Program-made: the position numbers and the translations under genes
Shown: in pieces, positions 10,594 through 30,128 of the stretch
How positions within the stretch are numbered: position 1 is the stretch's first letter
Layout of the letters: every line of letters begins with the position of its first letter
IMG/VR virus record: IMGVR_UViG_3300044640_001495
Coordinates: 62,001-126,000 of that record
Reading direction: 5' to 3' (one strand)
DNA: 64,000 nt
Notes under the pieces: generated by a model
Told to the model about the DNA's origin: nothing
Databases searched by the model: none
What the model saw: only the letters and a program-made list of their open reading frames with translations

Positions 10594-10623
10594 AGAGGGA
10601 TGATTCCGATTAAATATATTTAT

Positions 10624-14474: not shown

Positions 14475-14524
14475 ATTTATAGACAAAAAAAATTATGGAA
14501 AATTAATATAATAAATACTTTACC

Positions 14525-15019: not shown

Positions 15020-15025
15020 TAATAT

Positions 15026-15997: not shown

Positions 15998-16039
15998 ATT
16001 AGTTCCTCGTTTAAATACACTATTATTTATCTAAGAGAT

Positions 16040-16963
16040 ATGACAACACTTTATACACCCATCCATTTTAAAAAAAATAACGAAATAGATCCGGAAAACA
16101 GCGAATTTAAAATAGTCTATGTAGACATCGTTCATCGTTGCAATATGGAATGCAGCAATTGCTATCTGCCAAACAGAAGCTACAAAGACATAGAATTTAA
16201 CAAGCTCATTGAAACTATAAGCAAATTTAAAAAAAGAACGGAATTTAGATTAATTGGTGGGGAGCCTACATTACACAAAGATTTACCTAAGATCATAAAA
16301 CTTATAACAAGTATGCCTATCAAGCATCGAATAGTTTTAGTCACAAACGGATTGCGTTTAGCAAATGAAACTTACGTAAAAAAATTAGTGGATGCTGGAT
16401 TAAAAACAGTGTATCTTAGCATGAACGGCGCCGACGATGACACGGTTTATGCTACCATGGATAATTTACGATGTGCAAAGAAAAAAGTTAGAGCATTTCA
16501 AAATTGCGTGGATAATAAGATAAAACTGGCCATTGGTTGTATTCTAGCTAAGGGAATAAACGAACATGTTCCAGATCGTCTGAAAGAGTTGATACAAAAA
16601 AATAATTATCCAGTGGCGTTGGAGTTTAGAAATGTAGGGCAAATTGGTAGATATTCCTTAGAAAAAAATCAAAATTATTCTAGAAAAGAAATTTTAGATA
16701 TTTTAGAAAAAGTTTTTAATTTTGATTCTAATACAGAAGATTGGAAAAATAGTTTAATAGATGATGATTCTTATAGCTGGCATTTTCCTTTAGAAAAAGC
16801 CAAGGCAAAACTGTGTAAGACTACTTCTCTACGTATTACTGATTGGAGTTTAATGGATGAGGGATATCCTGCACAGGACAATCTTAAAAGAGGTAGGATT
16901 ACGGAAAATTTTAAACTGGCTCCTTTTTTCGAGCACCTACGTGAAAACGAAAACGGATATTAA
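16040..16963 (+). CDS. Radical SAM protein (MoaA/NifB/PqqE-like core)
   Basis: CNMECSNC (CxxxCxxC), GGEPTLH and VTNG motifs. Confidence 0.9.
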   Translation: MTTLYTPIHFKKNNEIDPENSEFKIVYVDIVHRCNMECSNCYLPNRSYKDIEFNKLIETISKFKKRTEFRLIGGEPTLHKDLPKIIKLITSMPIKHRIVLVTNGLRLANETYVKKLVDAGLKTVYLSMNGADDDTVYATMDNLRCAKKKVRAFQNCVDNKIKLAIGCILAKGINEHVPDRLKELIQKNNYPVALEFRNVGQIGRYSLEKNQNYSRKEILDILEKVFNFDSNTEDWKNSLIDDDSYSWHFPLEKAKAKLCKTTSLRITDWSLMDEGYPAQDNLKRGRITENFKLAPFFEHLRENENGY

Positions 16964-16964
16964 A

Positions 16965-17795
16965 TTATTTTATTGTGACACGATACAGGGATCGTCGGTG
17001 CCCGTCATATCCACCAGTAGCTCTGTGTAAGGTACAACGATTATCCCAGAGCACTAGTTGATTATTAGCCCACCGATGTGTATAGATAAATTTTGGATTT
17101 TTCTGGTGATTAAAAATTTCTGCTAGTATTTTGTAAGATTTATCTTTGTCTAAACCTTCAATTCCAATAGTATAACCTCGATTGCAGTTGATTACTTTCT
17201 TTCCTGTTTCAGGATGCTCCAACACCAACGGATGATGTTGGATCTCATACGCTTCATCTGAATATCTAAGTTTCATTGACCTACCAACATCTGACACCCC
17301 GTATCTAGCATCGGGCGCATACCCGCGTCTAGCAGAATTTATTCCTCGATGATTTTCTAAAATCTGTTTAAGGTCATCGTGAAGTGTGTCGTATGCTTTA
17401 TACAGATCGGAAAATAGTGTATCGCCACCACTCGGTGGAATTTCTTTAGCATATAATGCAGTTCCTTTTGGTGGCTCTTTCATGTGGAACCAATCAGAAT
17501 GCCAACCTTCGGCAAATATTTCAGTAGATTCGTTAGGCTCTCTCAGCACTTCTGCTACATAGTCTGATCCGTTAATTGGATCAATAAACGGATCTCGACA
17601 ATGCTCACCAAAATATAATACAAATTTTTCCAAGTCATTCACTGTAAGATGCTGATCAACAAAAATCAATACTTGGTACTTATTCCATAATTCTTTTATT
17701 TCCGTTATGTAGTGTGAATCTATTTTGGAAGAAAAATCTACGCCACTAATATAGGCGCCGTATTGAGTGTCTGTTGGAGTAATTGAAATTTTCAT
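16965..17795 (-). CDS. TauD/TfdA-family 2OG dioxygenase
   Basis: WHSD, GGDTLFSD and WDNRCTLHRA...R motifs. Confidence 0.92.
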   Translation of the reverse strand: MKISITPTDTQYGAYISGVDFSSKIDSHYITEIKELWNKYQVLIFVDQHLTVNDLEKFVLYFGEHCRDPFIDPINGSDYVAEVLREPNESTEIFAEGWHSDWFHMKEPPKGTALYAKEIPPSGGDTLFSDLYKAYDTLHDDLKQILENHRGINSARRGYAPDARYGVSDVGRSMKLRYSDEAYEIQHHPLVLEHPETGKKVINCNRGYTIGIEGLDKDKSYKILAEIFNHQKNPKFIYTHRWANNQLVLWDNRCTLHRATGGYDGHRRSLYRVTIK

Positions 17796-18553
17796 AATTT
17801 AAAAAATTTGTTTATAATTATACCAAAAAAGTCATAGTCGTGAGATTCTACTTTGGTAGTAGAGCTTGCCGCATATGCGTGGTGATTATTATGGAGGTGA
17901 CCTCCTTTTAAAAGAAAAACCATTGCTCTTGAATTTTTGTTTCTGCTACTTTCCCCTGTGATAAAATCTTGTGTTCCTATTCCGTCATGGCAATAAATGT
18001 TTACCAATCCGTTTAAATACAATCCCAATATTGCTGAAAAACTAAAAATATAAACATAAGAAACGAGCCCAAAAAGAAATATAAAGATTATAGAAAATCC
18101 TATATATAATTCATAATACCATTTGGCAAGAAATCTAAATCTAAAATCTTTTAGGTAGTCCCGTACCATCGACGGATTTACTGAAATAGGATTTAACCAG
18201 TATAGAACTTTTAATTTTCCTTTAAGTGGAGTATGCGGATCTTTTTCTGTATCAGTAAATGCATGATGCATTCGATGTATACCTACATAGGATAACAACG
18301 GCCCTTGCATATTAAAGAAATGTAAAAAAATCAATAAATTCTCTTTAAATTTTGTAGTCTTAAAACTTTTATGTGTGAAATATCTATGGGCACCTATCTC
18401 GTCGCCTATACCTTTAAATAATTCTTTAGCAATTAAGCCAGCAATTATTCCTAAAAAACTAAAATGATAAAACAACACCCAAAGTAAAAGTCCATGTTGA
18501 ATCAATATTAACGAATGATGATAGCGATGAAAGGTGTAAGTTCCTATCTGCAT
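17792..18553 (-). CDS. Membrane fatty-acid (delta-9-type) desaturase
   Basis: HRYFTH, HRMHH, DPHTP and HNNHH motifs. Confidence 0.9.
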   Translation of the reverse strand: MQIGTYTFHRYHHSLILIQHGLLLWVLFYHFSFLGIIAGLIAKELFKGIGDEIGAHRYFTHKSFKTTKFKENLLIFLHFFNMQGPLLSYVGIHRMHHAFTDTEKDPHTPLKGKLKVLYWLNPISVNPSMVRDYLKDFRFRFLAKWYYELYIGFSIIFIFLFGLVSYVYIFSFSAILGLYLNGLVNIYCHDGIGTQDFITGESSRNKNSRAMVFLLKGGHLHNNHHAYAASSTTKVESHDYDFFGIIINKFFKL

Positions 18554-19365
18554 TAGTCTGTTCCTGTTCTAAGCGATCCAGGTTTAGCTATCAGCTCAAT
18601 AATTCGTCTAGCAAAATCAAAATCTCCAGGATGTGTTTCGTAGCTGTAATGTCCGGGACGTGCATGATGATTATTGTGCAGTCCGCTGCCCAGTGTAATC
18701 CAATTAAAGATACCCCTTAAATTTCTGCTGTTATCCCCTGTTTCATGTTCTCTAGTTCCATAGTTTGGCGTATGTCCAAAAGTTGCAATTATTGCTTCAC
18801 TGTGTGTTTGTAGAACTCCAGCACCCATAAAAAAGAAAACGGCCAATTCCCATTTTATAACAAATAACAATACAAATGTGATCCAGAAAATTTTATAGTA
18901 ATGATCGCTCATAAATTTCATTACAGGATCCCTAAGCATTTTTCTACAAAACATTGGGTTAAGTTTAGGAGGATTGTTCTGCCATGTCAAATACGCATGC
19001 CAAAAACCTTTAGTAGGAGTATGAGGATCTAGATCAGTATCACTATATCTATGATGATAGGGAGTATGTATGTTTGCCATCCAAACTGGACTGCCTCTAC
19101 CTGCTAGCAGTCCTAGATATACTCCAACAATTTCTAAAATTTTATGCGTCTGGAAGGCAGAATGTGAAATATACCTATGATAGAAAATATTAAATCCAAT
19201 GAATCCAATAAAGAACCATCCTACATACGCAGCTAACAGCCACCATGCCGATGTCATATCTAACAGTACCATCGCGATACCACTGATAAATATCACATGC
19301 TGCGGTATCGTTATTGTTCTTAGATTTTTATTGATTGAAATTTTTTGTAGTAGATTTGTTAACAT
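18553..19365 (-). CDS. Membrane fatty-acid (delta-9-type) desaturase
   Basis: HRYISH, HTPYHH, DPHTP and HNNHH motifs. Confidence 0.9.
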   Translation of the reverse strand: MLTNLLQKISINKNLRTITIPQHVIFISGIAMVLLDMTSAWWLLAAYVGWFFIGFIGFNIFYHRYISHSAFQTHKILEIVGVYLGLLAGRGSPVWMANIHTPYHHRYSDTDLDPHTPTKGFWHAYLTWQNNPPKLNPMFCRKMLRDPVMKFMSDHYYKIFWITFVLLFVIKWELAVFFFMGAGVLQTHSEAIIATFGHTPNYGTREHETGDNSRNLRGIFNWITLGSGLHNNHHARPGHYSYETHPGDFDFARRIIELIAKPGSLRTGTD

Positions 19366-19382
19366 ACCCTTATTTAATTAAA

Positions 19383-20195
19383 ATGATTCACACCACTCAA
19401 ATTCCTTCTCAACACTGGCCAAAAAAGTTTGATCAATTTCGAGATTTGATTTATATTCCTCTAGATCTCCCAGAACCTCCTAAGGTCGATATCGATCTAT
19501 TTACAGATTGGGCCTTCACAAAAGCCCCCAAACTTGTAGGAAATATTAATCATCCCGAGACCGGTCAAAAAATTATGCATTTCGAGGAACGGGGTATGAA
19601 AGGCTGGGGATTTTATCCCTGGATCCAAGTTAGTGCATTTCATCACGGATACAGCAATTCTTGGATTTCAGAGTTTGATAAGATATTTCCAGATGTAGTT
19701 GAATACATTCATCTTTTCCCCTACAATATATTGTCCGGAGTAACTATCCTTTTACAAAAATCAAACGTGGCAGCTCCATTGCACACCGATGCCGATGATT
19801 GGCTAGGGATGAGATTTTATCTTCACAACGAAGTTAAAGAGGATGCGTTATATTTTTGTCCTAGAAAAACCAACGAAAACAATCGCATATCCACTTACAT
19901 TATAGAATCAGAAAATGTGTACCCACAAGAATGGGAGAAATACGTAGATTTAAATAAAAAAATTTACAGCAGTCATCCTTGCCAGAGACACGCCTGGGCG
20001 TTGACTAGTACGAGAGCAGCACACGGTATCGAAGCATTTGAATACGATCGATGTGCTAGGGTGACATTTTTAGTTCATTCGCATCGACCTTCTGTGAATC
20101 ACAACGCCTGGAACCCTGATAAATTGTATGACTTACTTACAAGATCTGTAAACAAATATTCAGATTATGCAATATGGTGGGAATCTTCAAAATAA
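19383..20195 (+). CDS. Hypothetical protein, possible HxD...H dioxygenase
   Basis: PLHTDAD ... RAAHG ... RVT; start refined to MIHTTQ. Confidence 0.5.
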   Translation: MIHTTQIPSQHWPKKFDQFRDLIYIPLDLPEPPKVDIDLFTDWAFTKAPKLVGNINHPETGQKIMHFEERGMKGWGFYPWIQVSAFHHGYSNSWISEFDKIFPDVVEYIHLFPYNILSGVTILLQKSNVAAPLHTDADDWLGMRFYLHNEVKEDALYFCPRKTNENNRISTYIIESENVYPQEWEKYVDLNKKIYSSHPCQRHAWALTSTRAAHGIEAFEYDRCARVTFLVHSHRPSVNHNAWNPDKLYDLLTRSVNKYSDYAIWWESSK

Positions 20196-20198
20196 AAA

Positions 20199-21635
20199 AT
20201 GCAAGTACTCATACTCACTACTAACACTGATCCTCGTAGACAGGTACGATATCTTGGACCATACCAGATAGCTTGGTGGTTGAGATCTAATGGCTATTCA
20301 ACGCAGGTACTTGATTACATTTACTTTATGACAAAGGAACAGAGATTATCTCTATTAAAAAAATTCATTACGACAGAAACAAAAATAGTAGGATATGCTC
20401 CTTTTGCTTTGCTTAAAACAAATCAAAGATTTGTACATGGTGAACAACTAATTCATGATATCCTAGATGAAGTCAAAGAAAATTTTCCCTGGGTTAAAAT
20501 TGTCATCGGGGGAGTCTGGGCAATAAATTGGATCAACTACGGTCGGAAAAAAATTAATTGGAAGGTAGATGCTGTGTTTAAAGATGAAGCGGAACACAGC
20601 TTTCTCGAATACTGCCATTATATTTTTAAAGGATCTTCTCATCCTAAGTTTACCATAGAAAACGATGTTAAGATAATACATCCTACACAAAAATATGATA
20701 TTCAAAATTGTTCAATGCGTTATGAAAAAAATGATTTTATCCTACCAGAAGAATCTCTTCCTTTAGAATTAAGTAGAGGTTGTATATTTAAATGCAAGTT
20801 TTGTCAATATCCTAACATAGGAAAAGACAAAGATGATTTTAATAAATCTATGGAGAGTATTAAACAATCTTTAATTCATAACTATGAAAACTTTGGAACC
20901 ACTAGATATCATCTATCAGATGATACACTGAATAGCCATAGAGAAAGAACAAGAGCATTCTGTGAGATGGTAAAGCAATTACCTTTCACAATAGAATATA
21001 TAGGATATGCTAGACTAGACCTGTTGTACATATGGCCGGAACAACAAGAACTATTACCCGAAAGTGGTTTGGTAAGTTGCCATTTTGGTATCGAATCATT
21101 CGACCCCGAATCTTGTAAAATCATAGGAAAAGGTTGGGGCGCCAAAAATAATAAATCTTCACTTAGAGACATCAGAACAAAATGGGGTGATGATGTGATA
21201 ATAAACTGCTCTATGATAGTGGGCCTTGGAAAAGAAACAGAACAAGACTGGCAAGATTCTCAAGAATGGTTTATACAGAATAAAATTCACGACTGGTTTT
21301 ATAATGTGCTATCGATACATAAAGGCGTTGCATCAAGTGAATTTGAAAGAGAATATGAAAAATATGGTTATAGATTTATTAATGATAGTGATTGGGAATG
21401 GGTTTCTAGCCATATGACTAGAGACAGAGCCACCGAATGGGTTAACAATAATATAAAAAAAATAGCTGGTATAGCAGTTCCTAGTGTTTGGAATTATTCG
21501 GCGCATAGAAATATAGGATTTTCCAAACAAGAGATTCTCGACAGCAATTATCTAGATCTTTTCGAAATCCGAGTAAAAAATCAGATGACAGAAAAACTTA
21601 TAGAAAAATATTATAAGCTGGCAATGGAGTATTAA
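20199..21635 (+). CDS. Cobalamin-binding-type radical SAM enzyme (class B methyltransferase-like)
   Basis: N-terminal Rossmann-like domain (LGPYQIAWWLR, IVIGG), SRGCIFKCKFC, DDT, and FGIES motifs. Confidence 0.85.
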   Translation: MQVLILTTNTDPRRQVRYLGPYQIAWWLRSNGYSTQVLDYIYFMTKEQRLSLLKKFITTETKIVGYAPFALLKTNQRFVHGEQLIHDILDEVKENFPWVKIVIGGVWAINWINYGRKKINWKVDAVFKDEAEHSFLEYCHYIFKGSSHPKFTIENDVKIIHPTQKYDIQNCSMRYEKNDFILPEESLPLELSRGCIFKCKFCQYPNIGKDKDDFNKSMESIKQSLIHNYENFGTTRYHLSDDTLNSHRERTRAFCEMVKQLPFTIEYIGYARLDLLYIWPEQQELLPESGLVSCHFGIESFDPESCKIIGKGWGAKNNKSSLRDIRTKWGDDVIINCSMIVGLGKETEQDWQDSQEWFIQNKIHDWFYNVLSIHKGVASSEFEREYEKYGYRFINDSDWEWVSSHMTRDRATEWVNNNIKKIAGIAVPSVWNYSAHRNIGFSKQEILDSNYLDLFEIRVKNQMTEKLIEKYYKLAMEY

Positions 21636-21636
21636 C

Positions 21637-22218
21637 ATGGAAAAATGTTTTAGAAAACTTAATCTTGGAATTCCCGAAGATCATAAAATTTTTAAAGAAT
21701 ATCGTAGTTTCAATTATAGTCAGGTAGAAGTTAAATTATATGATTCGTCAAAAACTTTTAAACAATATAATCTACCTAAAGACTATTTTTTAGGAACCGA
21801 AGTACACAAAGTAATGTGTGATCTAAATTTACGTGCATCTATATTTTTAATAGAAGCCAACCATTTTTACAATTGGCATAGAGACGCATGGCGGAATATA
21901 ACTCTTAACTTGACGCTAGGTGAGGATGAAAATTATCTTGTTTTATTCGCTCCTGATGCAAATCCTAAAGAATCTACTGGGTCTATGATGTACGAAAGAT
22001 TTATCGAACTCAAATACGATCACAACAAATTTGTGTTATTGAACACACAAATTCCACATTTCACTGTCACTACAGGAATCAAAGATAGGTATCTATTAAC
22101 AATTGCACATTATTCTGGAAAACCAACAGAGTCTCTAAAAAATCGACCATGCGACGATTACACAGAATTTGAAAATACACTTCAATATTTCGCTGAACGG
22201 AATCTAGTCAAAGATTGA
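21637..22218 (+). CDS. HxD...H dioxygenase-like protein (putative)
   Basis: YNWHRDA ... LLNTQIPHFT ... RYLLT. Confidence 0.55.
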   Translation: MEKCFRKLNLGIPEDHKIFKEYRSFNYSQVEVKLYDSSKTFKQYNLPKDYFLGTEVHKVMCDLNLRASIFLIEANHFYNWHRDAWRNITLNLTLGEDENYLVLFAPDANPKESTGSMMYERFIELKYDHNKFVLLNTQIPHFTVTTGIKDRYLLTIAHYSGKPTESLKNRPCDDYTEFENTLQYFAERNLVKD

Positions 22219-22860
22219 TTATAAAGAAATTAAAAAATCATTATTTCTATATTGATTTTTCAAATAACCAATTCGATAAAGAAGATCTACATTCCAGGTT
22301 CTATTTCTCATCATTTGCCTATATCTTGGATGTGACGGCATTGTACCAGCAGGAATAATTGCCTCGTCAAAAAATTCATACCTATCTTTTATTATTGGTA
22401 TCTGTTGTCTCATTCTATTCCAGCGGTTGGTAGTTTTAGGATTAGCCACAATAAAATCATAGGAATAATATCCTATACTTTCTGCATGTGAAATGAGCAA
22501 TGTGCTGGTGTCAGCAATGCCATTATCCACAGCATTGAAAATAGAATTATTAGGACTACAAAGTATTATACATTGCCGCCAAGATTTGATCATATTCCAG
22601 AACTGACCAATAGCAATACATTTAATATTTTCTTCTTTGTCAAATACTAGAGCAATCTTATTTTTAGTTTGAGTTTCATTAGAAATCATTGTTTCGATAG
22701 ATTTGATAAAAACAGAGATATCAAAATCTTTATCATCAAAAGGATACGACCAAATTTTGGAAGTGTTCTGTTTATAATTTTTGGTGTCAACTAATAATTT
22801 TTCTAGATATACTAGATCATCTATAGTTCCAAACCTAGAGGAATATTCAGGATTTATCAT
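22219..22860 (-). CDS. Hypothetical protein (possible GNAT-like fold)
   Basis: 213-aa ORF; only weak pattern resemblance. Confidence 0.5.
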   Translation of the reverse strand: MINPEYSSRFGTIDDLVYLEKLLVDTKNYKQNTSKIWSYPFDDKDFDISVFIKSIETMISNETQTKNKIALVFDKEENIKCIAIGQFWNMIKSWRQCIILCSPNNSIFNAVDNGIADTSTLLISHAESIGYYSYDFIVANPKTTNRWNRMRQQIPIIKDRYEFFDEAIIPAGTMPSHPRYRQMMRNRTWNVDLLYRIGYLKNQYRNNDFLISL

Positions 22861-23782
22861 AGAAGTTGTGCGGCAACATTTCTGATTTTAGATATTTTGA
22901 AAAACAAAGTCTATTTTCTTTTATTCCACGATTGTATTCTTCGAATGACTCAGTAGAAGTTGCGAAAAAAACACACTTTGACATTTCTACTTTTAAAATT
23001 TCACAAAACTTTTCTTGTACTGCACGATATTTTTGATAATTGTAATCGGCAGTATATCGTTGTAATAGTTTTAATCCAACCGCAGCCGACAGTCTATTGA
23101 CGTATTTGTTTTTATTATAAACATATAAAGCATCATCATTGTCTTCTTTGGTTAGTCTCATGCCGATTCTAAGGTGTTGTACCGGAAAATTTTTACTAAG
23201 GCTGAATGTGATATCAGTAATACATTCATAAGAAAAATCAAAATTGATTCCGCCACAAACTCCAAAGTAGCAACAGTCGATTAACACTGGAACTTTTAGT
23301 GCTTCACAAGTTTCTAAAACCGAATCAGTCATTACATGTTCATTTCCGGTGCCAGCGAACGGAAGACTAAAAATCACCACGTCATTTTCTTGTATTGGTT
23401 CATCTTCAATACAGACACTCTGATCAAAATATAGCTTGGCAGCTATTGAATGATACATGTATTCGCCTCGAAAATACCTTAACCTACGATTACGATTTTT
23501 TAGATAAAATTTATCAAAAGCTTCTGTGGTTCCGTTTGAAAAAGCGAGGCCTTGGAATTTTTCCAAACCTATAACTTGATTAGAGGTGGTTTTCATTATC
23601 CATGCTTTATACTCTTTTGTAAATTTATCGTGTATTTCATCATCATTCATACAATCATTTTGCAGAACATCAACAATGATATCAGATACTTCTTGTTCTA
23701 AATCTTGATCTTTAATGCAATGTACACTGCCAAAAGGTAATTTTTTTAATTCTAGTAATTTATTCCAAGTATTGTTTTTCAT
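22847..23782 (-). CDS. PLP-dependent aminotransferase-like enzyme (fold type I)
   Basis: IDCCY and FSLSK..LRIG motifs; start refined to MKNNTW. Confidence 0.7.
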   Translation of the reverse strand: MKNNTWNKLLELKKLPFGSVHCIKDQDLEQEVSDIIVDVLQNDCMNDDEIHDKFTKEYKAWIMKTTSNQVIGLEKFQGLAFSNGTTEAFDKFYLKNRNRRLRYFRGEYMYHSIAAKLYFDQSVCIEDEPIQENDVVIFSLPFAGTGNEHVMTDSVLETCEALKVPVLIDCCYFGVCGGINFDFSYECITDITFSLSKNFPVQHLRIGMRLTKEDNDDALYVYNKNKYVNRLSAAVGLKLLQRYTADYNYQKYRAVQEKFCEILKVEMSKCVFFATSTESFEEYNRGIKENRLCFSKYLKSEMLPHNFYDKS

Positions 23783-23838
23783 GAAATATTTATCATAGCA
23801 CTTTATTGCATAAATATTTTCACTTACGGAGATGAGTA

Positions 23839-24741
23839 GTGATACAAAAATTTTTATTAGGACTGAGCATGATGTTTTTTTTATCTGCTCCCAGCCAAGC
23901 ATTCGACGCTGGTTCCCAACTCATTAAAGTGGTGATGCCATTTGCTCCAGGAGGCGGTGTTGATCAAACTTTTAGGCATTTTGAAAATTGGGCAGCGAAA
24001 AAAAACATTAAGTTTGTAGCAGTTTACAGACCAGGAGCCGAAGGATTGATTGGCATGAATGAAATTGCCGCAATGCCCAAAGACGGATATCATATTTCTT
24101 TTGCAACAGCCGGCACCATAGCCGTCCAAAGATTGAAAAATCCTCAAGCAGAATTAGAAACAGTGACGTTGATAAAAAATAGTATTATGGCGTTTGTCAC
24201 TCATAAAGATAGTGGCATACGGTCTCTAACTGATTTGTATCAAGGTAATCCAAAAACTCTAGCCTACGGCGCACCCGGACAACTAATGACTATACAGCAG
24301 TTAATAGAACTTTCAGATGGAAAAATGAAAAGTGCCACTCTTGTGCCCTACAAAGGTGGAGCTCCAGTAGTACAAGATATTGCAGGCAATCATGTGCAGT
24401 TTGCAGCAGTACCATTGTTGATCACAAAGAGTTTTGTTGATTCGGGAACCATCCGATTACTGGCTGTAGACAGCACAACTAGATTAGCAGAATATCCCAA
24501 CATTCCCACGTTTAAAGAAATCTTCCCTAAGTGGAAAAGTACTGACGGATTTGCCGTGGTATTGCCCAAGGGAACTGATACAAAAGCTGTAGAATTTTGG
24601 AATTCTATATTGAAAGAATATGTCACAGATCAAAAAGTACAAGCTGACTTTTTGAAAGACTACAATATGTCGCAAAAATTTGGTAAAGAAGAATTGGAAA
24701 AAACTGTTTCTAATGCAATTAACGCATTAGAAAAAAAATAA
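23839..24741 (+). CDS. Tripartite tricarboxylate transporter substrate-binding protein (Bug/TctC family)
   Basis: Signal peptide, VVMPFAPGGGVD, PGAEGLIG..., VPYKGGAPVVQDIAGNHV and IPTFKE motifs. Confidence 0.85.
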   Translation: MIQKFLLGLSMMFFLSAPSQAFDAGSQLIKVVMPFAPGGGVDQTFRHFENWAAKKNIKFVAVYRPGAEGLIGMNEIAAMPKDGYHISFATAGTIAVQRLKNPQAELETVTLIKNSIMAFVTHKDSGIRSLTDLYQGNPKTLAYGAPGQLMTIQQLIELSDGKMKSATLVPYKGGAPVVQDIAGNHVQFAAVPLLITKSFVDSGTIRLLAVDSTTRLAEYPNIPTFKEIFPKWKSTDGFAVVLPKGTDTKAVEFWNSILKEYVTDQKVQADFLKDYNMSQKFGKEELEKTVSNAINALEKK

Positions 24742-24771
24742 TATGCACCTTGCTGTCATAAGAAAAATGTC

Positions 24772-25536
24772 ATGAATATCAACCAATACATCGATAGGGT
24801 AAAATTTAAAACCCTACCACAAGATTTTAATCATCAAGATGGTAAGAACTATGAAAGCTCTTACGAATACACCAAGACCTTTAGCAACTATCATTTTGAT
24901 AAATTTAAACAGGAGCATGAGGGTGAATGGTATCATCGGCTGGGAAGATTCAAAGGAGATTGGGCAGACGATGTTGCTAAAATTATAGATAAATCAAAAT
25001 CATTATCCTGGGATCAAAGTACGGCGGCAGGTCAACGTCCGGGATTCCCTGGGGGTGTTAGTCCAATGAGAACACAAGAGCAAAACGACAGAAAGGCTCA
25101 CGGTTTAGACCATGTTGATCATACTAACTTAGTTTTAGAAGAATATCTAGATCAGTTTCCTAAAATTAAAAAAATGGTAGACCATTGGCATTTAGAAAAA
25201 GTTAGTTATCGTTGCCATGTGCAATGGCCTGGTCAGACGTTCGCCATGCACATTGATAAATTATGGCATCGCAATCCCACAGACCCGTCAAAAATAGTTA
25301 GGATTATTGTACATCTAGAAGATTACGAACCCGGCCAGATCCTTATATACGGTAATGCAGTACACACTCAGTGGAGAGCTGGCGATGTTCATATGTTCGA
25401 TACCTTGAATGTTCCGCATGGAACTTTTAATATTTCAAATAAACCAAGACCAAATATCACTATCACAGGATTGAGATCAGCCCTTACTGATCAAAGATTG
25501 CAAGAAGCTACTGCTGAATCAGAATATTGTATATAA
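24772..25536 (+). CDS. AspH-like HxD...H dioxygenase (putative)
   Basis: PGQTFAMHIDK ... WRAGDV...NVPHGTFN...R. Confidence 0.65.
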   Translation: MNINQYIDRVKFKTLPQDFNHQDGKNYESSYEYTKTFSNYHFDKFKQEHEGEWYHRLGRFKGDWADDVAKIIDKSKSLSWDQSTAAGQRPGFPGGVSPMRTQEQNDRKAHGLDHVDHTNLVLEEYLDQFPKIKKMVDHWHLEKVSYRCHVQWPGQTFAMHIDKLWHRNPTDPSKIVRIIVHLEDYEPGQILIYGNAVHTQWRAGDVHMFDTLNVPHGTFNISNKPRPNITITGLRSALTDQRLQEATAESEYCI

Positions 25537-25574
25537 TGCATCCGTAAAAAACATCGCATATGGTAAAATAAAAA

Positions 25575-26315
25575 ATGAATAAAAACTTTGTTATTGTTGG
25601 GACTCCTCGTAGCGGCACTACGTTTGTCTGCGATGTGCTGAACGAATTTGATGATATTTGGATTCCAGAGTTTCCTAATTACGAACCGTTTAATCCGCAT
25701 AACTTACACAGATTAGCTAACTCGATGAAAAATAATTCATTCGATCAAGATTTAATCATTAAAAAATTTATTAGTGTAAAATCAAAGAAAAATGTAGATT
25801 ATTTTGGTTTTAAAACTTTCTTGTCCTTTCACTCAGATTTAAAAAATTTAATTAAAGATAATAATCTAGATGTGATCTTAATTTTAAGAAAAGATATTTG
25901 GAAAGTCATAGGAAGTATGCTGATCGCAATAGACCATAATGACTACATAGGTAGCTCTAAAAAACATGATCCGTTTATTTTTGTTGAATCCAAAAGAGAA
26001 GTAAGAAGAATAATGACATTTTTCAATCAACTTTGTAGAACATATTGGGAACTAGAGAATTTATTTGCTAAAGATTCTAATATTATCGAAAAACTATATT
26101 TTGAAGATATTGTAAATAATAACATTGCAAACAATTTAGACACTTATTTTAACAAAAAAATTATTTTTGATCATAATTATAACGACACCGACGATATCAA
26201 TTCTTATATTGGAAATTTTGAAGAACTGCAAAGTTTAATTATAAAAGAAGTTAAAAAAAATCACACACATTATTCAGCCCTTCCTTCATATATTGTTAAT
26301 CAATTAGTGTTATGA
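25575..26315 (+). CDS. Sulfotransferase (Stf0-like)
   Basis: IVGTPRSGTT 5'-PAPS-binding loop; ILILRKD 3'-PB-like motif. Confidence 0.8.
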   Translation: MNKNFVIVGTPRSGTTFVCDVLNEFDDIWIPEFPNYEPFNPHNLHRLANSMKNNSFDQDLIIKKFISVKSKKNVDYFGFKTFLSFHSDLKNLIKDNNLDVILILRKDIWKVIGSMLIAIDHNDYIGSSKKHDPFIFVESKREVRRIMTFFNQLCRTYWELENLFAKDSNIIEKLYFEDIVNNNIANNLDTYFNKKIIFDHNYNDTDDINSYIGNFEELQSLIIKEVKKNHTHYSALPSYIVNQLVL

Positions 26316-26686
26316 TACTACAAAAAGTTATATTCGAAGAAAAAAATAGAAATGGCACAAGTGTGGATGATTTTTATTATCGAGGATTAGAAGAAAAACT
26401 CCAAGGAAAAAAAGGCACAGGAGTTAGAGCGTTAGCAGCTGATTTTATCAGACAGGGCAGAATCCTAGATAGATTTTTAATCTTAGATGAAACAGGATGT
26501 AAATTAGAAATTTATACTTTTTTTAAAGATGAAGAATCATTTTCTGAATTTATTAATCATCCTGTAAATCAAAATGCAAAAAAGTTTTGGCAAGATCGAG
26601 ATTGGCAAAGAACTGCCACAAAAACTGTAATTGCTGATTTTTTGAACGTGAGAAACAGACTCGGACAACTTAAATCTATAATCTAA
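26312..26686 (+). CDS. Hypothetical protein
   Basis: 124-aa ORF translationally coupled to the sulfotransferase. Confidence 0.65.
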   Translation: MILQKVIFEEKNRNGTSVDDFYYRGLEEKLQGKKGTGVRALAADFIRQGRILDRFLILDETGCKLEIYTFFKDEESFSEFINHPVNQNAKKFWQDRDWQRTATKTVIADFLNVRNRLGQLKSII

Positions 26687-27125
26687 TTGATCGATTTGTT
26701 TTAAAGACCCAATCCCAAAAAGGTGTTCCGATACCATAATTGCATCTACTTTCTGTATGATGCAAATAATGCCATTGACCAGATGTGTACCAAGGATACA
26801 AATTGAATTTTCTATTGTGTTCTAGCCTTTCTTGTATAATGGCTGCATAAACATAAAATAAAATAATTATCCACCATTGACCGGTGATCCAGCTGAAAAT
26901 AAAAGTAGGTAGAACTTCAGTTATCCAATAATCAAACGTGCTAGGCCAATTGTCATTGAACAGAAAAATGTTATTCCAATGCCAAACTATCTTGTGTTTT
27001 TTAATATAAGCGTGATGATGAAAATGTAGTTTTGACAGAAATGAAATTTTATGACTGGCTCGGTGTATCCAGTATATCATAAAAGTCCATAGAAAGAAAT
27101 AAAATATTATTTCAATACCGATCAT
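26676..27125 (-). CDS. Fatty-acid hydroxylase / sterol desaturase family protein
   Basis: His boxes HRASH, HFHHH and HYLHH; NYG...WDWVFKT C-terminus. Confidence 0.85.
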   Translation of the reverse strand: MIGIEIIFYFFLWTFMIYWIHRASHKISFLSKLHFHHHAYIKKHKIVWHWNNIFLFNDNWPSTFDYWITEVLPTFIFSWITGQWWIIILFYVYAAIIQERLEHNRKFNLYPWYTSGQWHYLHHTESRCNYGIGTPFWDWVFKTNRSIRL

Positions 27126-27916
27126 ACTAGACCTAGATTTTTCCGAATTTTAGTAGCACTGATGTCAGTAATAGATTCATCAAACGTTTCCTCACCACTG
27201 GTATATCCTACACCACGACCCCAGCCAATATGAACAATATTTGGGACAACTTGAATTTCGTATTGCCCTTGATAAAGCATATCTAAATCACGTTTGATAA
27301 ATCCTTTAACTTTGTCAACTTCGAAAGGATTACTACCTTGCCATCCTTGTACATCACGTACTTGGATGATGACCTGTCCAGTCTTGGCCAGTAATCTTTC
27401 AAAGAGTGCTCGATGACCTGCATGCCATGGTTGCCATCTGCCTAACATCTGAACAGTTTCTTTTTTCCAGTCAAACACAGGACGACGACGATTGTCTATA
27501 ATGTGTGCGGCAATAAACTCCCCCCATTTTTCTCCATCTTGTTCTGTAATCCTAAAGTCGTAAATCTCTGGCGGAATAAAGGCTTTGTTAGTATCTTCAA
27601 ACCGACCTTTGTCAATTGTATCTACCCAGATAGTCCAATCTGCTTTAAAGTTGTTACGCATCTCAACTAGAGGAGCAACAAAGTCACAGATGACGTAATC
27701 AACATCAGTCATTGCATCTGCTAATTCGCGCATACGATGACTTTGACGAATACGACCTTCGTTGCTAAAATCCCAGTCGTTATACTTTTTACGCACATCG
27801 TCAGCATTTAACCAACCTACACGTTTTTTATCTGCTTGTAAATGGTCAACAATATGTTGTGCCAAATATGTTTTACCTGAACCAGGTAGGCCCATAACTA
27901 AAATACGTTTGTTCAT
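27122..27916 (-). CDS. cysC: Adenylylsulfate kinase fused to an HxGH nucleotidyltransferase domain
   Basis: GLPGSGKT P-loop, NADDVR and FSNEGR APS-kinase-like motifs; C-terminal GRWQPWHAGH and ISATKIR. Confidence 0.75.
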   Translation of the reverse strand: MNKRILVMGLPGSGKTYLAQHIVDHLQADKKRVGWLNADDVRKKYNDWDFSNEGRIRQSHRMRELADAMTDVDYVICDFVAPLVEMRNNFKADWTIWVDTIDKGRFEDTNKAFIPPEIYDFRITEQDGEKWGEFIAAHIIDNRRRPVFDWKKETVQMLGRWQPWHAGHRALFERLLAKTGQVIIQVRDVQGWQGSNPFEVDKVKGFIKRDLDMLYQGQYEIQVVPNIVHIGWGRGVGYTSGEETFDESITDISATKIRKNLGLV

Positions 27917-27995
27917 GTAATTTCCTTTAGAATTAACCTATCTTCTCAACTACCAAAAAATGGAGTTATACAAAATTTATTTATTTGGAAAATCA

Positions 27996-28024
27996 TTGAC
28001 CTTTGTTCATTATGATTATATAAT
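27996..28024 (+). promoter_or_regulatory. Near-consensus sigma70 promoter of the tRNA-like gene
   Basis: TTGACC-17 nt-TATAAT ending 7 nt before the first base of the tRNA-like gene. Confidence 0.75.
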
Positions 28025-28030
28025 ATAGTT

Positions 28031-28141
28031 GTGGTCGTGAGTGGAATTGGCAGACCTCCCGCTCGACTCATAGTCGAGAATGGGGACGGGGCAAAGTCGT
28101 AGACAGCGCCTTTGTAGGTTCGAAACCTACCGACCATACCA
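28031..28141 (+). tRNA. Oversized (111 nt) tRNA-like RNA with Leu/Ser-type body, CAU loop and extended anticodon and variable arms
   Basis: Acceptor GUGGUCG/CGACCAU+ACCA, D loop GGAAUUGGCAGAC, T arm GUAGG-UUCGAAA-CCUAC, hairpin CUCGA-CUCAUAG-UCGAG on a further CCCG/UGGG stem. Confidence 0.8.
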
Positions 28142-28146
28142 GTTTT

Positions 28147-28170
28147 AAGCCCCTGTAAACAGGGTGGCTT
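28147..28170 (+). terminator. Hairpin after the tRNA-like gene (possible terminator or processing signal)
   Basis: AAGCC-CCTGT-AA-ACAGG-GT-GGCTT; only a weak U tract. Confidence 0.4.
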
Positions 28171-28206
28171 ATAAGTATTAGAACATAACTATAAGGAAAA
28201 AATATT

Positions 28207-28395
28207 ATGTCAACAGTTGATCAATTAAAAGCAGACTTCGAAGCATTCTTAGCCGAGGACGCAAAATTCACAGCCGGCAACGGTGCAGCAGGAACTCGTG
28301 CTCGCAAAGCTCTTCAAGAAGTTGCCAAGGGTGTTAAAGCTCGTCGCAACGAAATCACAGAAGAAAAGAACGCCCGCAAAGAAGCCAAGGCCTAA
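28207..28395 (+). CDS. Histone H1-like (Hc1-type) small basic protein
   Basis: KF..GNGAAGTRARKALQE...KARR motif. Confidence 0.7.
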   Translation: MSTVDQLKADFEAFLAEDAKFTAGNGAAGTRARKALQEVAKGVKARRNEITEEKNARKEAKA

Positions 28396-28397
28396 TT

Positions 28398-28907
28398 ATG
28401 AGCAACAAGGACGATATCACATTCGATGATATTGAAATTGATCTAAGTGATTATGGTGCTGCTCAGGCAAGCACCATGATCGATACCTTAGATACTATTA
28501 CACTGACTGGCTCAGATCAATATTCAAATATTAATACAATAACTCTACCTAGTACTACATTTACTTACGGTGGAGCAACAGTTGGTGGTATTACTACAAT
28601 TAATAATATTAATTCCAACAGTCAATGGACTACTGGAACTAGTGGATATACTATAAGCCCTAGCTACGGAGTTAGTCCTAGCACGGTTAACATTAACACC
28701 ACTGGTATCGAAATGGCAGCAGGTACTGATATTAAAATTGATGGTCAGAGCCTAAAAGAATTTATGAAGAAGATGGAGCAGAGATTAGCTATACTTGTTC
28801 CTGATCCTACAAAACTCGAAAAGTTCGAAGCACTTAAAAAAGCCTACGAACATTACAAGACTATGGAAAGTCTTTGTTTTGACGAACCTATTGAAGAACC
28901 AAAGTGA
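28398..28907 (+). CDS. Hypothetical phage protein
   Basis: Thr/Ser-rich N-terminus; C-terminal LEKFEALKKAYEHYKTMESL. Confidence 0.7.
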   Translation: MSNKDDITFDDIEIDLSDYGAAQASTMIDTLDTITLTGSDQYSNINTITLPSTTFTYGGATVGGITTINNINSNSQWTTGTSGYTISPSYGVSPSTVNINTTGIEMAAGTDIKIDGQSLKEFMKKMEQRLAILVPDPTKLEKFEALKKAYEHYKTMESLCFDEPIEEPK

Positions 28908-29452
28908 ATATCAAAATCTATGATGACTTGATTCCCAAGCATCTTCAAGATTATTATGAGTTGAGTATTTTAGGAAAGACCAGTGTGGAAGAAGAGATCA
29001 TGCACCCCACAGTTGATCTGCGGTGCAAGTACGAATCAACTGCCAATGAACCGGGAGTTAACTCTATTTCGTTTGTTCACGTGCTAAAGTCTAGTTCACA
29101 ACGTTCTGACCATCTAGATAATTTTGCATTAATACCGCAGGTTGTTTGTCAAGACCTAGGATTAATATTAAAAGAAATAATGGTGGCTAGGATTTATCTT
29201 ATATTGCCCTATAAAACAAAATTAAAAAATTACGCAGCACATCAAGACTTCCCTTTTAAACATACCGTGGTATTATATTATGTCAACGATGCAGATGGAG
29301 ACACTGTATTCTTTGACAAGGACAATAACGTAGTTCAATCAGTTTCTCCTAAACGTGGCCGAGTGGTTGTGTTTGACGGAGAAATATATCACGGTGGTGG
29401 CATTCCTAAAACAGGGCCACGATGTGTTGTAAACTTCGATATACTAACCTAA
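28904..29452 (+). CDS. 2OG-Fe(II) oxygenase-like protein
   Basis: AHQDF, VLYYVNDADGDTVFF and PKRGRVVVFDGEIYH...R motifs. Confidence 0.75.
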   Translation: MNIKIYDDLIPKHLQDYYELSILGKTSVEEEIMHPTVDLRCKYESTANEPGVNSISFVHVLKSSSQRSDHLDNFALIPQVVCQDLGLILKEIMVARIYLILPYKTKLKNYAAHQDFPFKHTVVLYYVNDADGDTVFFDKDNNVVQSVSPKRGRVVVFDGEIYHGGGIPKTGPRCVVNFDILT

Positions 29453-29465
29453 GCAGTAAATAAAC

Positions 29466-30128
29466 ATGAATGTTAAACTTTTATCATATAGTCAACCCGC
29501 AGCCGAATTTCGAAATATGGGCATCGAAGATGCGCAGGAACTCATTGCGTATTGCGCCCGTGTCAGCAATCCTTCCAATCAGCTCAACACAGACACATCA
29601 GAAAAACTCATCAGATACTTGGTCAAACACCAACACTGGAGCCCACTCGAAATGGTCAGTGCCTGTATCGAAATCACCACAACCAGAGATATTGCCCGAC
29701 AAATCTTGCGACACAGAAGTTTCAGTTTCCAAGAGTTCAGTCAGCGATATGCTGACCCTACTAAAGACCTGTCGTTTGTATGTAGAGAAGCACGACTCCA
29801 AGATCCAAAAAATAGACAGAACAGCGTCCCAGTCGATGATCAGCTGTTACAAAATGAATGGTATCGTGCTCAACAGCGAGTTATCTACGCTGCCAAACGA
29901 GAATATGAATGGGCCATTGCTAACGGTATAGCCAAGGAACAGGCTCGTGCTGTGCTGCCGGAAGGTCTTACAGAAAGTCGCTTGTACATGAATGGTACAC
30001 TACGTTCATGGGTACACTTCATTGAACTACGATCAGCTAACGGCACACAACTAGAGCATCAGGAAGTTGCCAAGGCCTGTGCAAAAGTGATTGCAGAAAT
30101 CTTTCCATTGGCTGAAAGTCTTGTATAA
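29466..30128 (+). CDS. thyX: FAD-dependent thymidylate synthase
   Basis: HWSPLEM, RQILRHRSFSFQEFSQRY and EQARAVLP motifs. Confidence 0.96.
   Translation: MNVKLLSYSQPAAEFRNMGIEDAQELIAYCARVSNPSNQLNTDTSEKLIRYLVKHQHWSPLEMVSACIEITTTRDIARQILRHRSFSFQEFSQRYADPTKDLSFVCREARLQDPKNRQNSVPVDDQLLQNEWYRAQQRVIYAAKREYEWAIANGIAKEQARAVLPEGLTESRLYMNGTLRSWVHFIELRSANGTQLEHQEVAKACAKVIAEIFPLAESLV

What the first reader, a model, noticed from the sequence alone, without database searches (positions are those of the whole stretch)
27996..28170. 111-nt tRNA-like RNA with a Leu-type body, CAU loop and a nearly doubled anticodon arm, under its own promoter
Seen: intact 7-bp acceptor stem with A73-CCA, Leu/Ser-type D loop and canonical T arm. 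The anticodon arm is CCCG/UGGG, an AA bulge, then CUCGA/UCGAG closing the loop C-U-CAU-A-G, about 9 bp instead of 5. The variable arm is also extended (GGGGC-AAA-GUC-GUA-GAC-A-GCGCC). A TTGACC-17-TATAAT promoter places the start almost exactly at base 1, and a hairpin follows the CCA. Perfect stems argue against a decaying pseudogene. Established: bacterial LeuRS relies on A73 and tertiary shape, not the anticodon; a 9-bp arm should not fit normal decoding geometry. Inference: a decoy for anticodon nucleases or T-box/RelA-type sensors, an aminoacyl donor for non-ribosomal chemistry in the adjacent island, or a precursor needing excision of a short insert.
Basis: partly seen in the sequence, partly recalled or inferred. 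Interest (0 to 1): 0.85.

Follow-up and report, generated by a model that had tools for sequence, protein, structure and literature searches.

The report
Anticodon-less tRNA-like RNA of lake phages
Many uncultured lake phages carry a conserved, transcribed gene for a tRNA-shaped RNA derived from tRNA-Leu whose anticodon arm has been replaced by a long, lineage-specific hairpin, so it cannot read codons and most likely acts as a stable tRNA-bodied decoy or leader rather than in translation.

Summary
Window 28031-28141 (+) encodes a 111-nt RNA with a 7-bp acceptor stem, A73-CCA, a Leu-type D arm, a canonical T arm, a 9-bp bulged anticodon arm and an extended variable arm. A TTGACC-17-TATAAT promoter ends 6 nt before base 1.

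It is not a one-off. I found 68 distinct versions in 157 viral contigs, and none in cultured phages, 185,579 reference genomes or Rfam. Compensatory changes support the extended arms. Metatranscriptome contigs cover it.

It is not a decoding tRNA or an intron-bearing precursor. Across relatives the anticodon arm comes in five unrelated forms, including a 4-bp stub, and only one form has the CAU loop. The acceptor stem, T arm and CCA stay 94-99% identical.

The -10 box always lies exactly 6 nt before G1, so the transcript should be leaderless. The Hc1 histone-like gene follows 19-70 nt after CCA in about 92% of loci, which implies co-transcription. The low-GC island upstream is not conserved.

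Best reading (inferred, about 0.4): a tRNA-Leu chassis gives processing, stability and perhaps charging, and displays a lineage-specific hairpin that titrates a host factor early in infection. Main rival: a cis-acting 5' module of the Hc1 mRNA. Closest known analogue: T4 species 1 RNA, whose function is also unknown.

The parts
27996..28001 (+). -35 box TTGACC
   Evidence: Promoter scan, 11 of 12 matches. TTG-type -35 boxes are present in relatives.
28019..28024 (+). -10 box TATAAT, exactly 6 nt before G1
   Evidence: The same 6-nt spacing holds in every related locus printed.
28031..28141 (+). 111-nt tRNA-Leu-derived tRNA-like RNA (whole gene)
   Evidence: Family model R1 scores it 129.7 bits. 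Covariation. RNA contigs.
28031..28037 (+). Acceptor stem, 5' strand. Pairs with 28131-28137. G1 is the predicted transcription start.
   Evidence: All 7 pairs are standard in 42 of 42 versions. Pair 1-72 is G-C, G-U or A-U, and pair 5-68 is U-A or C-G.
28040..28057 (+). D arm: 3-pair stem (third pair U-C here) and a loop with GGAAUUGG (G18 G19)
   Evidence: Alignments A1 and A4. The third pair is C-G in the GAGC-AAAU variant. The D loop resembles that of T4 tRNA-Leu.
28058..28084 (+). Extended anticodon arm: outer CCCG/UGGG, AA bulge (28079-28080), inner CUCGA/UCGAG
   Evidence: Four inner pairs show compensated changes in 57 cells, with 0 of 500 shuffles as high. Outer pair 28-42 switches C-G to G-C between subfamilies.
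28067..28073 (+). Loop CUCAUAG. The subfamily consensus is C-Y-C-A-U-A-G.
   Evidence: C32, A35, U36, A37 and G38 are invariant in 26 versions. Position 33 is C in 19 of them, and position 34 is U in 2.
28085..28113 (+). Extended variable arm: outer stem, internal loop, inner stem GUC/GAC, triloop GUA
   Evidence: Compensated changes at two pairs. The register set by covariation is G60-C80, G61-C79 and C62-G78.
28114..28130 (+). T arm GUAGG-UUCGAAA-CCUAC
   Evidence: Mean pairwise identity of 95% in the set collected through Hc1. One compensated pair, U-A to C-G.
28131..28141 (+). Acceptor 3' strand, discriminator A73 (28138) and encoded CCA (28139-28141)
   Evidence: ACCA is kept in all but one of 68 versions, while the sequence just after it varies freely.
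28146..28171 (+). G+C-rich hairpin after the CCA with no U tract. Not a clear terminator.
   Evidence: The terminator scan does not list it. It is present in only part of the family.
28172..28206 (+). Leader of the Hc1 gene, with the conserved AUAAGUA box and the AAGGA ribosome-binding site
   Evidence: Alignment of the sequences downstream of the CCA.
28207..28395 (+). Histone H1-like (Hc1) gene, co-transcribed with the tRNA-like RNA
   Evidence: Pfam Hc1, E = 3e-14. It follows the CCA by 19-70 nt in nearly all loci. RNA contigs bridge the two.

Best explanation
Shown: this is a conserved, transcribed gene for a non-decoding RNA derived from a phage tRNA-Leu.

Strongly implied by geometry: a host-type sigma-70 promoter starts transcription at tRNA position 1. 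No 5' leader is made, so no RNase P step is needed. The transcript runs on into the Hc1 histone-like gene.

Inferred: the encoded CCA end is freed by ordinary tRNA 3'-end processing.

Mechanism (inferred): the acceptor, T, D and variable-arm core is kept as in a type II tRNA. It therefore folds into the L shape, is nuclease-resistant, and is handled by tRNA enzymes. LeuRS probably also recognises it, since bacterial LeuRS ignores the anticodon. The anticodon arm has been replaced by a long hairpin that differs between phage lineages. Each hairpin type keeps its own conserved tip. I infer that the tRNA body serves as a chassis, and that the RNA acts in trans early in infection as a decoy or sponge for a host tRNA- or RNA-binding factor, such as a defence nuclease or sensor. 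The lineage-specific arm tip would set the target.
For: 1. The family is real and under selection. There are 68 versions in 157 viral loci. Compensated changes occur in the inner anticodon stem, variable arm, acceptor stem and T stem, with 0 of 500 shuffles as high.
2. Conservation is that of a tRNA body without an anticodon. Mean pairwise identities are acceptor 94%, T arm 95%, N73-CCA 99%, D arm 84%, variable arm 70% and anticodon arm 55%.
3. There are five unrelated arm types. The CYCAUAG loop and the UUGNGAAA loop are each kept over many compensated stem changes. This suggests a ligand for the tip.
4. D-arm, anticodon-arm and variable-arm types are reassorted among versions. This is a modular pattern.
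5. The -10 box lies exactly 6 nt before G1 or A1 in all loci, including those with other downstream genes.
6. CCA is conserved while the trailer is not. This implies that a free 3' end matters.
7. RNA evidence comes from four metatranscriptomes. Depth is zero over 27696-27843 and 27918-27991, upstream of the promoter, apart from 2.25 in one run over 27844-27917, inside the neighbouring kinase gene. One contig starts at 28033. Another covers 28039-28142. At least three arm variants are seen.
8. The consensus sigma-70 promoter means early expression by host RNA polymerase, which fits host takeover or anti-defence.
Against: - No partner is known. No target complementary to the loop is enriched in the window.
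- One lineage keeps the gene with only a 4-bp stub arm. For that lineage the arm tip cannot be the active part.
- There is no terminator of its own, and RNA contigs bridge into Hc1. A cis role is therefore not excluded.
- A discrete 111-nt species, its exact ends and its charging state have not been shown.
- Some RNA contigs from relatives carry 7-42 more letters on the 5' side than a start at G1 would give.
Confidence: 0.4

Rival explanations
1. Cis-acting 5' module of the Hc1 operon mRNA. The tRNA fold caps the 5' end of the early transcript: the 5' triphosphate sits in a base-paired stem, which protects against 5'-end-dependent decay. Alternatively it serves as a processing signal that sets the mRNA's 5' end and half-life.
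For: - It is always the first thing transcribed and never has its own terminator. The next gene's ribosome-binding site follows the CCA by as little as 4 nt.
- 73 of 80 loci collected through Hc1 have it directly upstream.
- RNA contigs bridge the tRNA-like RNA and the Hc1 start.
- The promoter plus tRNA-like unit also precedes other genes in L041, L115 and L180. It behaves like a portable 5' module.
Against: - A plain hairpin would protect a 5' end. This does not explain strict conservation of A73-CCA, the T loop and G18 G19, or the conserved arm-tip loops.
- Six Hc1 loci keep a promoter but lack the element, so Hc1 expression does not need it.
Confidence: 0.25
2. Leucylated but non-decoding tRNA. 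LeuRS charges it and it acts through its aminoacyl end. It could be an aminoacyl donor for a non-ribosomal transferase, or a sink for LeuRS, EF-Tu or a RelA-type sensor of the CCA end. The arm would be only a spacer that keeps it off the ribosome.
For: - The parts that bacterial LeuRS needs (A73, D-loop architecture, elbow) are the parts conserved. That LeuRS needs these parts is established knowledge, not tested here.
- The family model's best match among T4 RNAs is tRNA-Leu.
- The stub-arm lineage shows that the arm tip is dispensable.
Against: - No aminoacyl-tRNA-dependent transferase lies in the conserved neighbourhood, which is Hc1, an unknown ORF, ThyX and 2OG oxygenase.
- The island genes upstream are not conserved.
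- A mere spacer would not keep subfamily-specific loops.
- Charging is untested.
Confidence: 0.12
3. A working tRNA after all. Either it is a Met or Ile (AUA) decoder with an odd arm, or it is a precursor from which a short insert is removed to give tRNA-Leu.
For: - The loop has CAU at the anticodon position with A37. Two versions have UAU, which would also read AUA.
- Removing 12 nt after U33 would leave a CU-NAG-AN loop in many versions. This follows from the sequence, as the base of the inner stem is C-G, U-A.
Against: - The arm is 9 bp with a bulge instead of 5 bp.
- Position 33 is C in 19 of 26 versions, and C32-G38 can pair.
- Four other arm types have no 7-nt loop.
- The hypothetical mature anticodon would differ between close orthologues (GAG, CAG, UAG, AAG, UGG, CGG). 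ARAGORN's intron calls are inconsistent.
- No group I intron or bulge-helix-bulge motif is present, and no short-intron machinery is known in bacteria.
Confidence: 0.03
4. A decaying tRNA-Leu pseudogene or neutral remnant that hitch-hikes between a promoter and Hc1.
For: tRNA finders do not call it. It is absent from 6 Hc1 loci.
Against: - 93-96% of cells form standard pairs, with many compensated changes.
- CCA and the exact promoter spacing are kept in all versions.
- It is transcribed.
Confidence: 0.03

Closest known systems
Bacterial and phage tRNA-Leu (type II tRNA), for example T4 tRNA-Leu
   Same: - 7-bp acceptor stem, A73-CCA and a canonical T arm.
- 3-bp D stem with an AAUUGG-type D loop.
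- Long variable arm.
- The family model scores T4 tRNA-Leu at 37.9 bits, the best of all T4 RNAs.
   Different: - No Leu anticodon and no 5-bp stem with a 7-nt loop.
- The arm is 4-13 bp and differs between lineages.
- The variable arm is about twice the usual length.
- It is leaderless rather than cut by RNase P.
- It falls below the Rfam and ARAGORN thresholds.
Phage T4 species 1 RNA (rnaC), a small stable RNA of unknown function (PMC3014915)
   Same: - An oversized tRNA-shaped RNA encoded by a T4-type phage.
- The predicted fold has an acceptor-like stem, a canonical T arm (CCGGG-UUCGAAU-CCCGG), a variable-arm-like hairpin and one very long hairpin where the anticodon arm would be.
- It is not a decoder.
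   Different: - No detectable sequence homology beyond the T arm (16 bits).
- rnaC sits inside the tRNA cluster and is cut from a precursor.
- rnaC is a late RNA (PMC9697503), has no encoded CCA in the annotated span and no clear D arm.
tRNA-like RNAs of eukaryotic systems: MHV68 vtRNAs (TMERs) and mascRNA. From my own knowledge, not tested here.
   Same: A tRNA-shaped module that is not used in decoding. It provides processing and stability, and sits at one end of a longer transcript.
   Different: Those depend on RNA polymerase III or RNase P and RNase Z in eukaryotic cells. Here a bacterial sigma-70 promoter starts at +1 and an mRNA follows.
Engineered tRNA scaffolds, in which the anticodon arm is replaced by a payload hairpin (Ponchon and Dardel approach). 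From my own knowledge.
   Same: The same architecture. An intact acceptor, T and D core gives folding, processing and nuclease resistance. The anticodon arm is replaced by an arbitrary structured insert.
   Different: That is a laboratory design. This would be a natural counterpart with at least five payload arms.
Bacterial Y RNA (YrlA) tRNA-like module (PMC12135203 mentions phage Ro60 and tRNA mimicry)
   Same: A tRNA-mimicking core used for something other than decoding. Also found in phages.
   Different: In YrlA the RNA ends lie in the Ro-binding stem and the acceptor is closed by a loop. Here the ends form the acceptor with a free CCA. I saw no Ro60 gene among the annotated neighbours.

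Membership tests
Canonical tRNA (Rfam RF00005; ARAGORN) | 7-bp acceptor stem with a discriminator and CCA | tested here: met
   All 7 pairs are standard in 42 of 42 versions. ACCA is kept.
Canonical tRNA (Rfam RF00005; ARAGORN) | 5-bp T stem with a UUCRANN loop, and a D loop with G18 G19 | tested here: met
   GUAGG-UUCGAAA-CCUAC and GGAAUUGG.
Canonical tRNA (Rfam RF00005; ARAGORN) | 5-bp anticodon stem closing a 7-nt loop with U33 | tested here: not met
   The arm is 9 bp with a bulge. Position 33 is C in 19 of 26 versions. Other subfamilies have 3- to 8-nt loops on 4- to 13-bp stems.
Canonical tRNA (Rfam RF00005; ARAGORN) | Reaches the curated detection threshold | tested here: not met
   No hit at this site with the gathering or E-value thresholds. 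The 95-nt form scores 22.5 bits against a cut-off of 29. No hit in 15 relatives. ARAGORN default finds none.
tRNA-Leu | Type II body: long variable arm, A73, Leu-type D arm | tested here: met
   The family model ranks T4 tRNA-Leu at 37.9 bits above tRNA-Ser at 24.3 bits and the rest. Only T4 tRNAs were compared.
tRNA-Leu | Leu anticodon (NAG or YAA) in a 7-nt loop | tested here: not met
   The loop is CUCAUAG. No version has a Leu anticodon loop.
tRNA-Leu | Aminoacylation by LeuRS | not testable with these tools
   Needs an in vitro charging assay or acid-gel analysis.
Intron-containing tRNA | The same insert position and the same mature anticodon in orthologues, plus a known intron type (group I, or bulge-helix-bulge) | tested here: not met
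   ARAGORN -i gives nine isotypes and inserts of 12-36 nt at varying positions. The element is too short for a group I intron. It has a single 3'-side bulge only.
tRNA-Met or tRNA-Ile2 (CAU) | CAU in a standard anticodon loop, conserved across orthologues | tested here: not met
   CAU or UAU occurs in one of five arm types only, on an extended stem.
T4 species 1 RNA (rnaC) family | Sequence or structure homology to rnaC | tested here: inconclusive
   16 bits, E = 0.0017 in a 6-kb search, carried by the T arm. The overall architecture is similar.
Rfam freshwater-2 motif (for the leader after the CCA) | Reaches the gathering score | tested here: not met
   17 bits against a cut-off of 49.9. No hit in 15 relatives.
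tmRNA or YrlA-type tRNA mimics | tmRNA: a tag reading frame. YrlA: a closed acceptor with the RNA ends in the Ro-binding stem. | tested here: not met
   ARAGORN finds no tmRNA. Here the ends form the acceptor with a free CCA.

The most novel reading that the evidence does not exclude
This is a natural tRNA-scaffold display system. Lake phages would use a leaderless tRNA-Leu chassis, possibly leucylated, to present interchangeable hairpins. The hairpins would be swapped by recombination and would evolve in an arms race, each titrating a different host defence or regulatory factor early in infection. That would be an RNA-based counter-defence built on a tRNA body.
Probability: 0.3. Interest if true: 0.85.

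Novelty: new variant of a known kind. Interest (0 to 1): 0.7.

Why it matters
Phage tRNA genes are usually read as codon-usage helpers or as replacements for tRNAs cut by host defences. Here a widespread phage lineage has kept everything about a tRNA except the part that reads codons. It has made that part the fastest-evolving, modular element and has placed the gene at +1 of an early promoter.

If the RNA is a decoy or sponge, it adds an RNA-based layer to phage counter-defence. It would also be a natural precedent for the tRNA scaffolds used in RNA engineering. If it is charged, it would be a rare case of an aminoacyl-tRNA made for a purpose outside the ribosome.

It also gives a tractable relative of T4's species 1 RNA, whose function has been unknown for 50 years. 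Practically, standard tRNA finders and Rfam miss the family, so it goes unannotated in at least 157 viral metagenome contigs.

Tried and rejected
- Intron or insert reading. ARAGORN with intron options gave inconsistent isotypes across orthologues. Rejected.
- Antisense target of the loop. CTATGRG and CYCATAG occur at chance frequency in the window (13 found, 13 expected) and none sits at a start codon. No support.
- Internal promoter formed by TTGGCA (D loop) and CATAGT (the CAU loop). The last base of the would-be -10 box varies freely in relatives. Rejected.
- Functional link to the neighbouring P-loop kinase (KTI12/APS-kinase-like). The kinase is adjacent only in near-identical contigs. 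Rejected.
- Search for a source tRNA or a prophage copy in 185,579 reference genomes. The T-arm-plus-acceptor pattern gave 0 hits. A D-arm 15-mer gave only chance hits outside tRNA genes, so that scan told me nothing.
- Cultured phages: no match to the 111 nt. Only the Hc1 gene matched, in S-SRM01, where no tRNA-like RNA lies upstream.
- A loose 5'-half pattern in viral contigs returned mostly chance hits. I filtered them with the covariance model.
- The freshwater-2 motif for the Hc1 leader is below threshold.
- Literature searches found no description of this RNA. The supplements of the IMG/VR structured-RNA survey are not held.

Full report
**What is there.**
Window 28031-28141 (+) is a 111-nt tRNA-shaped RNA.
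- The acceptor stem is GUGGUCG paired with CGACCAU, with G1-U72. A73 and an encoded CCA follow it.
- The D arm has a 3-pair stem and the loop GGAAUUGGCAGA. Its third pair is a U-C mismatch in this version.
- The anticodon arm is CCCG/UGGG, an AA bulge, then CUCGA/UCGAG around the loop CUCAUAG.
- The variable arm is long and has an internal loop.
- The T arm is canonical: GUAGG-UUCGAAA-CCUAC.
- The promoter scan finds TTGACC-17-TATAAT at 27996-28024, the best site in the region. It ends 6 nt before G1.

ARAGORN calls eight ordinary tRNAs at 33-4330 but nothing here. Rfam 15 has no match at the gathering or E-value threshold. The minimum-free-energy fold reproduces the four arms. The genome is an uncultured T4-superfamily myovirus:
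- It has a clamp loader, baseplate proteins and ThyX.
- Its closest cultured relative by clamp loader is Pseudomonas phage PA5oct, at 56% amino-acid identity.

**It is not an artefact or a chance fold.**
- Fifteen lake metagenome runs hold 92-98% of the sampled words of the surrounding 3.2 kb.
- An exact-pattern scan of IMG/VR with the T arm plus the acceptor 3' strand returned 76 loci.
- A covariance model (R1) pulled further members out of a looser scan.
- I also collected 80 loci through the neighbouring Hc1 protein alone, which puts no condition on the RNA sequence. 73 of them carry the RNA just upstream of Hc1.
- In all I hold 68 distinct versions from 157 loci.
- None occurs in 50,697 cultured-phage records or in one genome per 185,579 prokaryotic species.

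**Structure is under selection.**
- In the 26 distinct CAU-type versions, 96% of cells form standard pairs. Four pairs of the inner anticodon stem and two of the variable arm change on both sides, in 57 cells. No shuffle out of 500 reaches this, and all slid controls collapse.
- In the Hc1-collected set (42 distinct versions), 12 pairs show compensated changes. These include acceptor pairs 1-72 (G-C, G-U, A-U) and 5-68 (U-A, C-G), and a T-stem pair.
- The extended arms are therefore real helices, and the 5' end of the RNA is position 28031.

**It is not a decoder or a precursor.**
Across the family the anticodon arm comes in five unrelated forms:
1. A 5-bp inner stem with the loop C-Y-C-A-U-A-G. 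This is the window's type.
2. A hairpin of about 12 bp, pyrimidine-rich on one strand, with CUA, GAAA, GUAA or UUUUU loops.
3. A bulged helix of about 10 bp capped by UUGNGAAA. This is the commonest type in the Hc1-collected set.
4. A short CCCAAAGUU-type arm.
5. A 95-nt version whose arm is only CUGC-UUAG-GCAG.

Further points against decoding:
- Within type 1, position 33 is C in 19 of 26 versions, C32 and G38 can pair, and two versions read UAU instead of CAU.
- ARAGORN with intron options assigns orthologues to nine isotypes with different inserts.
- The tempting reading is to remove 12 nt after U33 to leave CU-NAG-AN. It only reflects the C-G, U-A pairs at the base of the inner stem. The implied anticodon changes between close relatives.

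In the unbiased set, mean pairwise identities are as follows:

| Region | Mean pairwise identity |
|---|---|
| Acceptor stem | 94% |
| T arm | 95% |
| N73-CCA | 99% |
| D arm | 84% |
| Variable arm | 70% |
| Anticodon arm | 55% |

Even so, the loops CYCAUAG and UUGNGAAA are each held constant over many compensated stem changes. D-arm, anticodon-arm and variable-arm types occur in mixed combinations, which indicates modular exchange.

**The body is of tRNA-Leu origin.**
On the T4 tRNA region, the family model scores as follows:

| T4 RNA | Score (bits) |
|---|---|
| tRNA-Leu | 37.9 (E = 1e-9) |
| tRNA-Ser | 24.3 |
| tRNA-Thr | 17.5 |
| rnaC | 16.0 |

The D loop of the GAGC-AAAUUGGCAAAG variant is close to that of T4 tRNA-Leu. 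It is established knowledge, not tested here, that bacterial LeuRS relies on A73 and the D-loop and elbow architecture and does not need the anticodon arm. These are exactly the conserved parts.

**Transcription geometry and context.**
- In every locus printed, a TATAAT-like hexamer lies exactly 6 nt before G1 (A1 in two versions). This holds in the few loci where the downstream gene is not Hc1. The canonical start is the seventh base, so the primary transcript should begin at tRNA position 1 with no leader.
- The ordinary tRNAs of the same phage sit in clusters with leaders.
- Downstream, the Hc1 histone-like gene (Pfam E = 3e-14) starts 19-70 nt after the CCA, sometimes with the ribosome-binding site only 4 nt away. 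There is no room for another promoter and usually no terminator. Hc1 must therefore be co-transcribed.
- Upstream, the genes vary. The low-GC island in the window (GC 0.31-0.35 against 0.42) and its kinase are adjacent only in near-identical contigs.
- Six Hc1 loci keep a promoter but lack the RNA, so Hc1 does not depend on it.

**Expression.**
I laid contigs from four freshwater metatranscriptomes on 27400-29600.
- Depth is zero in all four runs over 27696-27843 and 27918-27991, except 2.25 in one run over 27844-27917, inside the neighbouring kinase gene.
- Depth rises to 3-38 over the RNA in three of the four runs.
- One contig starts at 28033 and runs through the RNA into the Hc1 start codon. 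It carries the compensated CUUGG/CCAAG stem of a relative.
- Another contig covers 28039-28142.
- Loose ends show type 3 and other variants in the same sample.

Caveats:
- These are assembler contigs, not reads.
- Contig ends at the CCA coincide with the point where strains diverge.
- Two contigs from relatives carry 7-42 more 5' letters than a G1 start predicts.
- Transcription is supported, but the exact ends and a free 111-nt species are not shown.

**Mechanism.**
*Shown:*
- It is a selected, transcribed tRNA-Leu-derived RNA with an intact tRNA core and CCA.
- Its anticodon arm is non-decoding and hypervariable, but each lineage conserves its own version.
- It is fixed at +1 of an early-type promoter and followed by Hc1.

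*Inferred:*
- The core provides folding, 3' processing, stability and recognition by tRNA enzymes, perhaps including leucylation.
- The arm tip binds a lineage-specific ligand.
- The RNA acts in trans as a decoy or sponge early in infection (confidence about 0.4).

This reading explains the fast, modular arm together with the frozen body and CCA. The main rival is a cis-acting 5' stabiliser or processing module of the Hc1 mRNA (0.25). It explains the position and the missing terminator, but not the CCA, the T-loop and D-loop conservation, or the conserved arm tips. A charged aminoacyl donor or sink acting through the body alone (0.12) fits the stub-arm lineage but has no enzyme partner in the conserved neighbourhood. 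A true decoder or precursor, and a pseudogene, are each at about 0.03.

**Comparison with known systems.**
- It fails membership of canonical tRNA on the anticodon arm and on detection thresholds.
- It fails membership of intron-bearing tRNA, tmRNA and YrlA.
- It works most like two things. One is T4 species 1 RNA (rnaC). By RNAfold, rnaC also has an acceptor-like stem, a canonical T arm, a variable-arm-like hairpin and one very long hairpin. Its role is unknown (PMC3014915, PMC9697503).
- The other is the engineered tRNA scaffold, in which the anticodon arm is replaced by a payload (my own knowledge).
- Homology to rnaC is not demonstrable.

I file it as a new variant of a known kind, namely virus-encoded tRNA-like small RNAs. 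Three features are new: leaderless transcription, a modular hypervariable arm, and fixed linkage to an early Hc1 operon.

Noticed in passing
window 4332-4369: TTGACA-17-TATAAT followed by 6 nt and then ATG. 0.01 such sites are expected by chance. The ATG at 4367 is in frame with the ORF ending at 4591. This is a candidate leaderless mRNA with the same -10-to-start geometry as the tRNA-like RNA.
   Followed up: partly
window about 8000-28000: A low-GC island (0.31-0.35 against about 0.42) with sulfotransferase-like, fatty-acid-hydroxylase and APS-kinase/KTI12-like P-loop kinase genes. It ends at the promoter of the tRNA-like RNA. The upstream content differs between relatives, so this is a hypervariable region.
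   Followed up: partly
window 28142-28206, and the same stretch in relatives: Between the CCA and the Hc1 ribosome-binding site there is a small hairpin with a conserved AUAAGUA box followed by UAGAACAUAAC. It has a weak, sub-threshold likeness to the Rfam freshwater-2 motif (17 bits against a cut-off of 49.9). It may be a processing or translational element for Hc1.
   Followed up: partly
L313 1909-2047 (-), T4 rnaC: T4 species 1 RNA folds (z = -4.6) into an acceptor-like stem, a very long hairpin, a second hairpin and a canonical T arm, CCGGG-UUCGAAU-CCCGG. It looks like an oversized tRNA with a replaced anticodon arm.
   Followed up: partly
L379, L382, L383, L389, L391, L392 (upstream of Hc1 at 1201): Six Hc1 loci lack the tRNA-like RNA. 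Four still have a sigma-70-type promoter with a short leader. In two, another ORF abuts Hc1.
   Followed up: no
L041 6150-6245 (-), and L067: A 95-nt version with a 4-bp, tetraloop arm. It has the same promoter spacing, but a different small ORF follows 17 nt after the CCA. L115 and L180 (type 4 arm) also precede other genes.
   Followed up: partly
window 41384-48745: A single 2453-aa ORF upstream of baseplate- and tail-fibre-like genes. Not examined.
   Followed up: no
L180 2144-2234: ARAGORN calls a 91-nt tRNA-Ile(UAU) with a long extra arm, in a contig that also carries a type 4 tRNA-like RNA. This is an unusual type II-like Ile tRNA.
   Followed up: no
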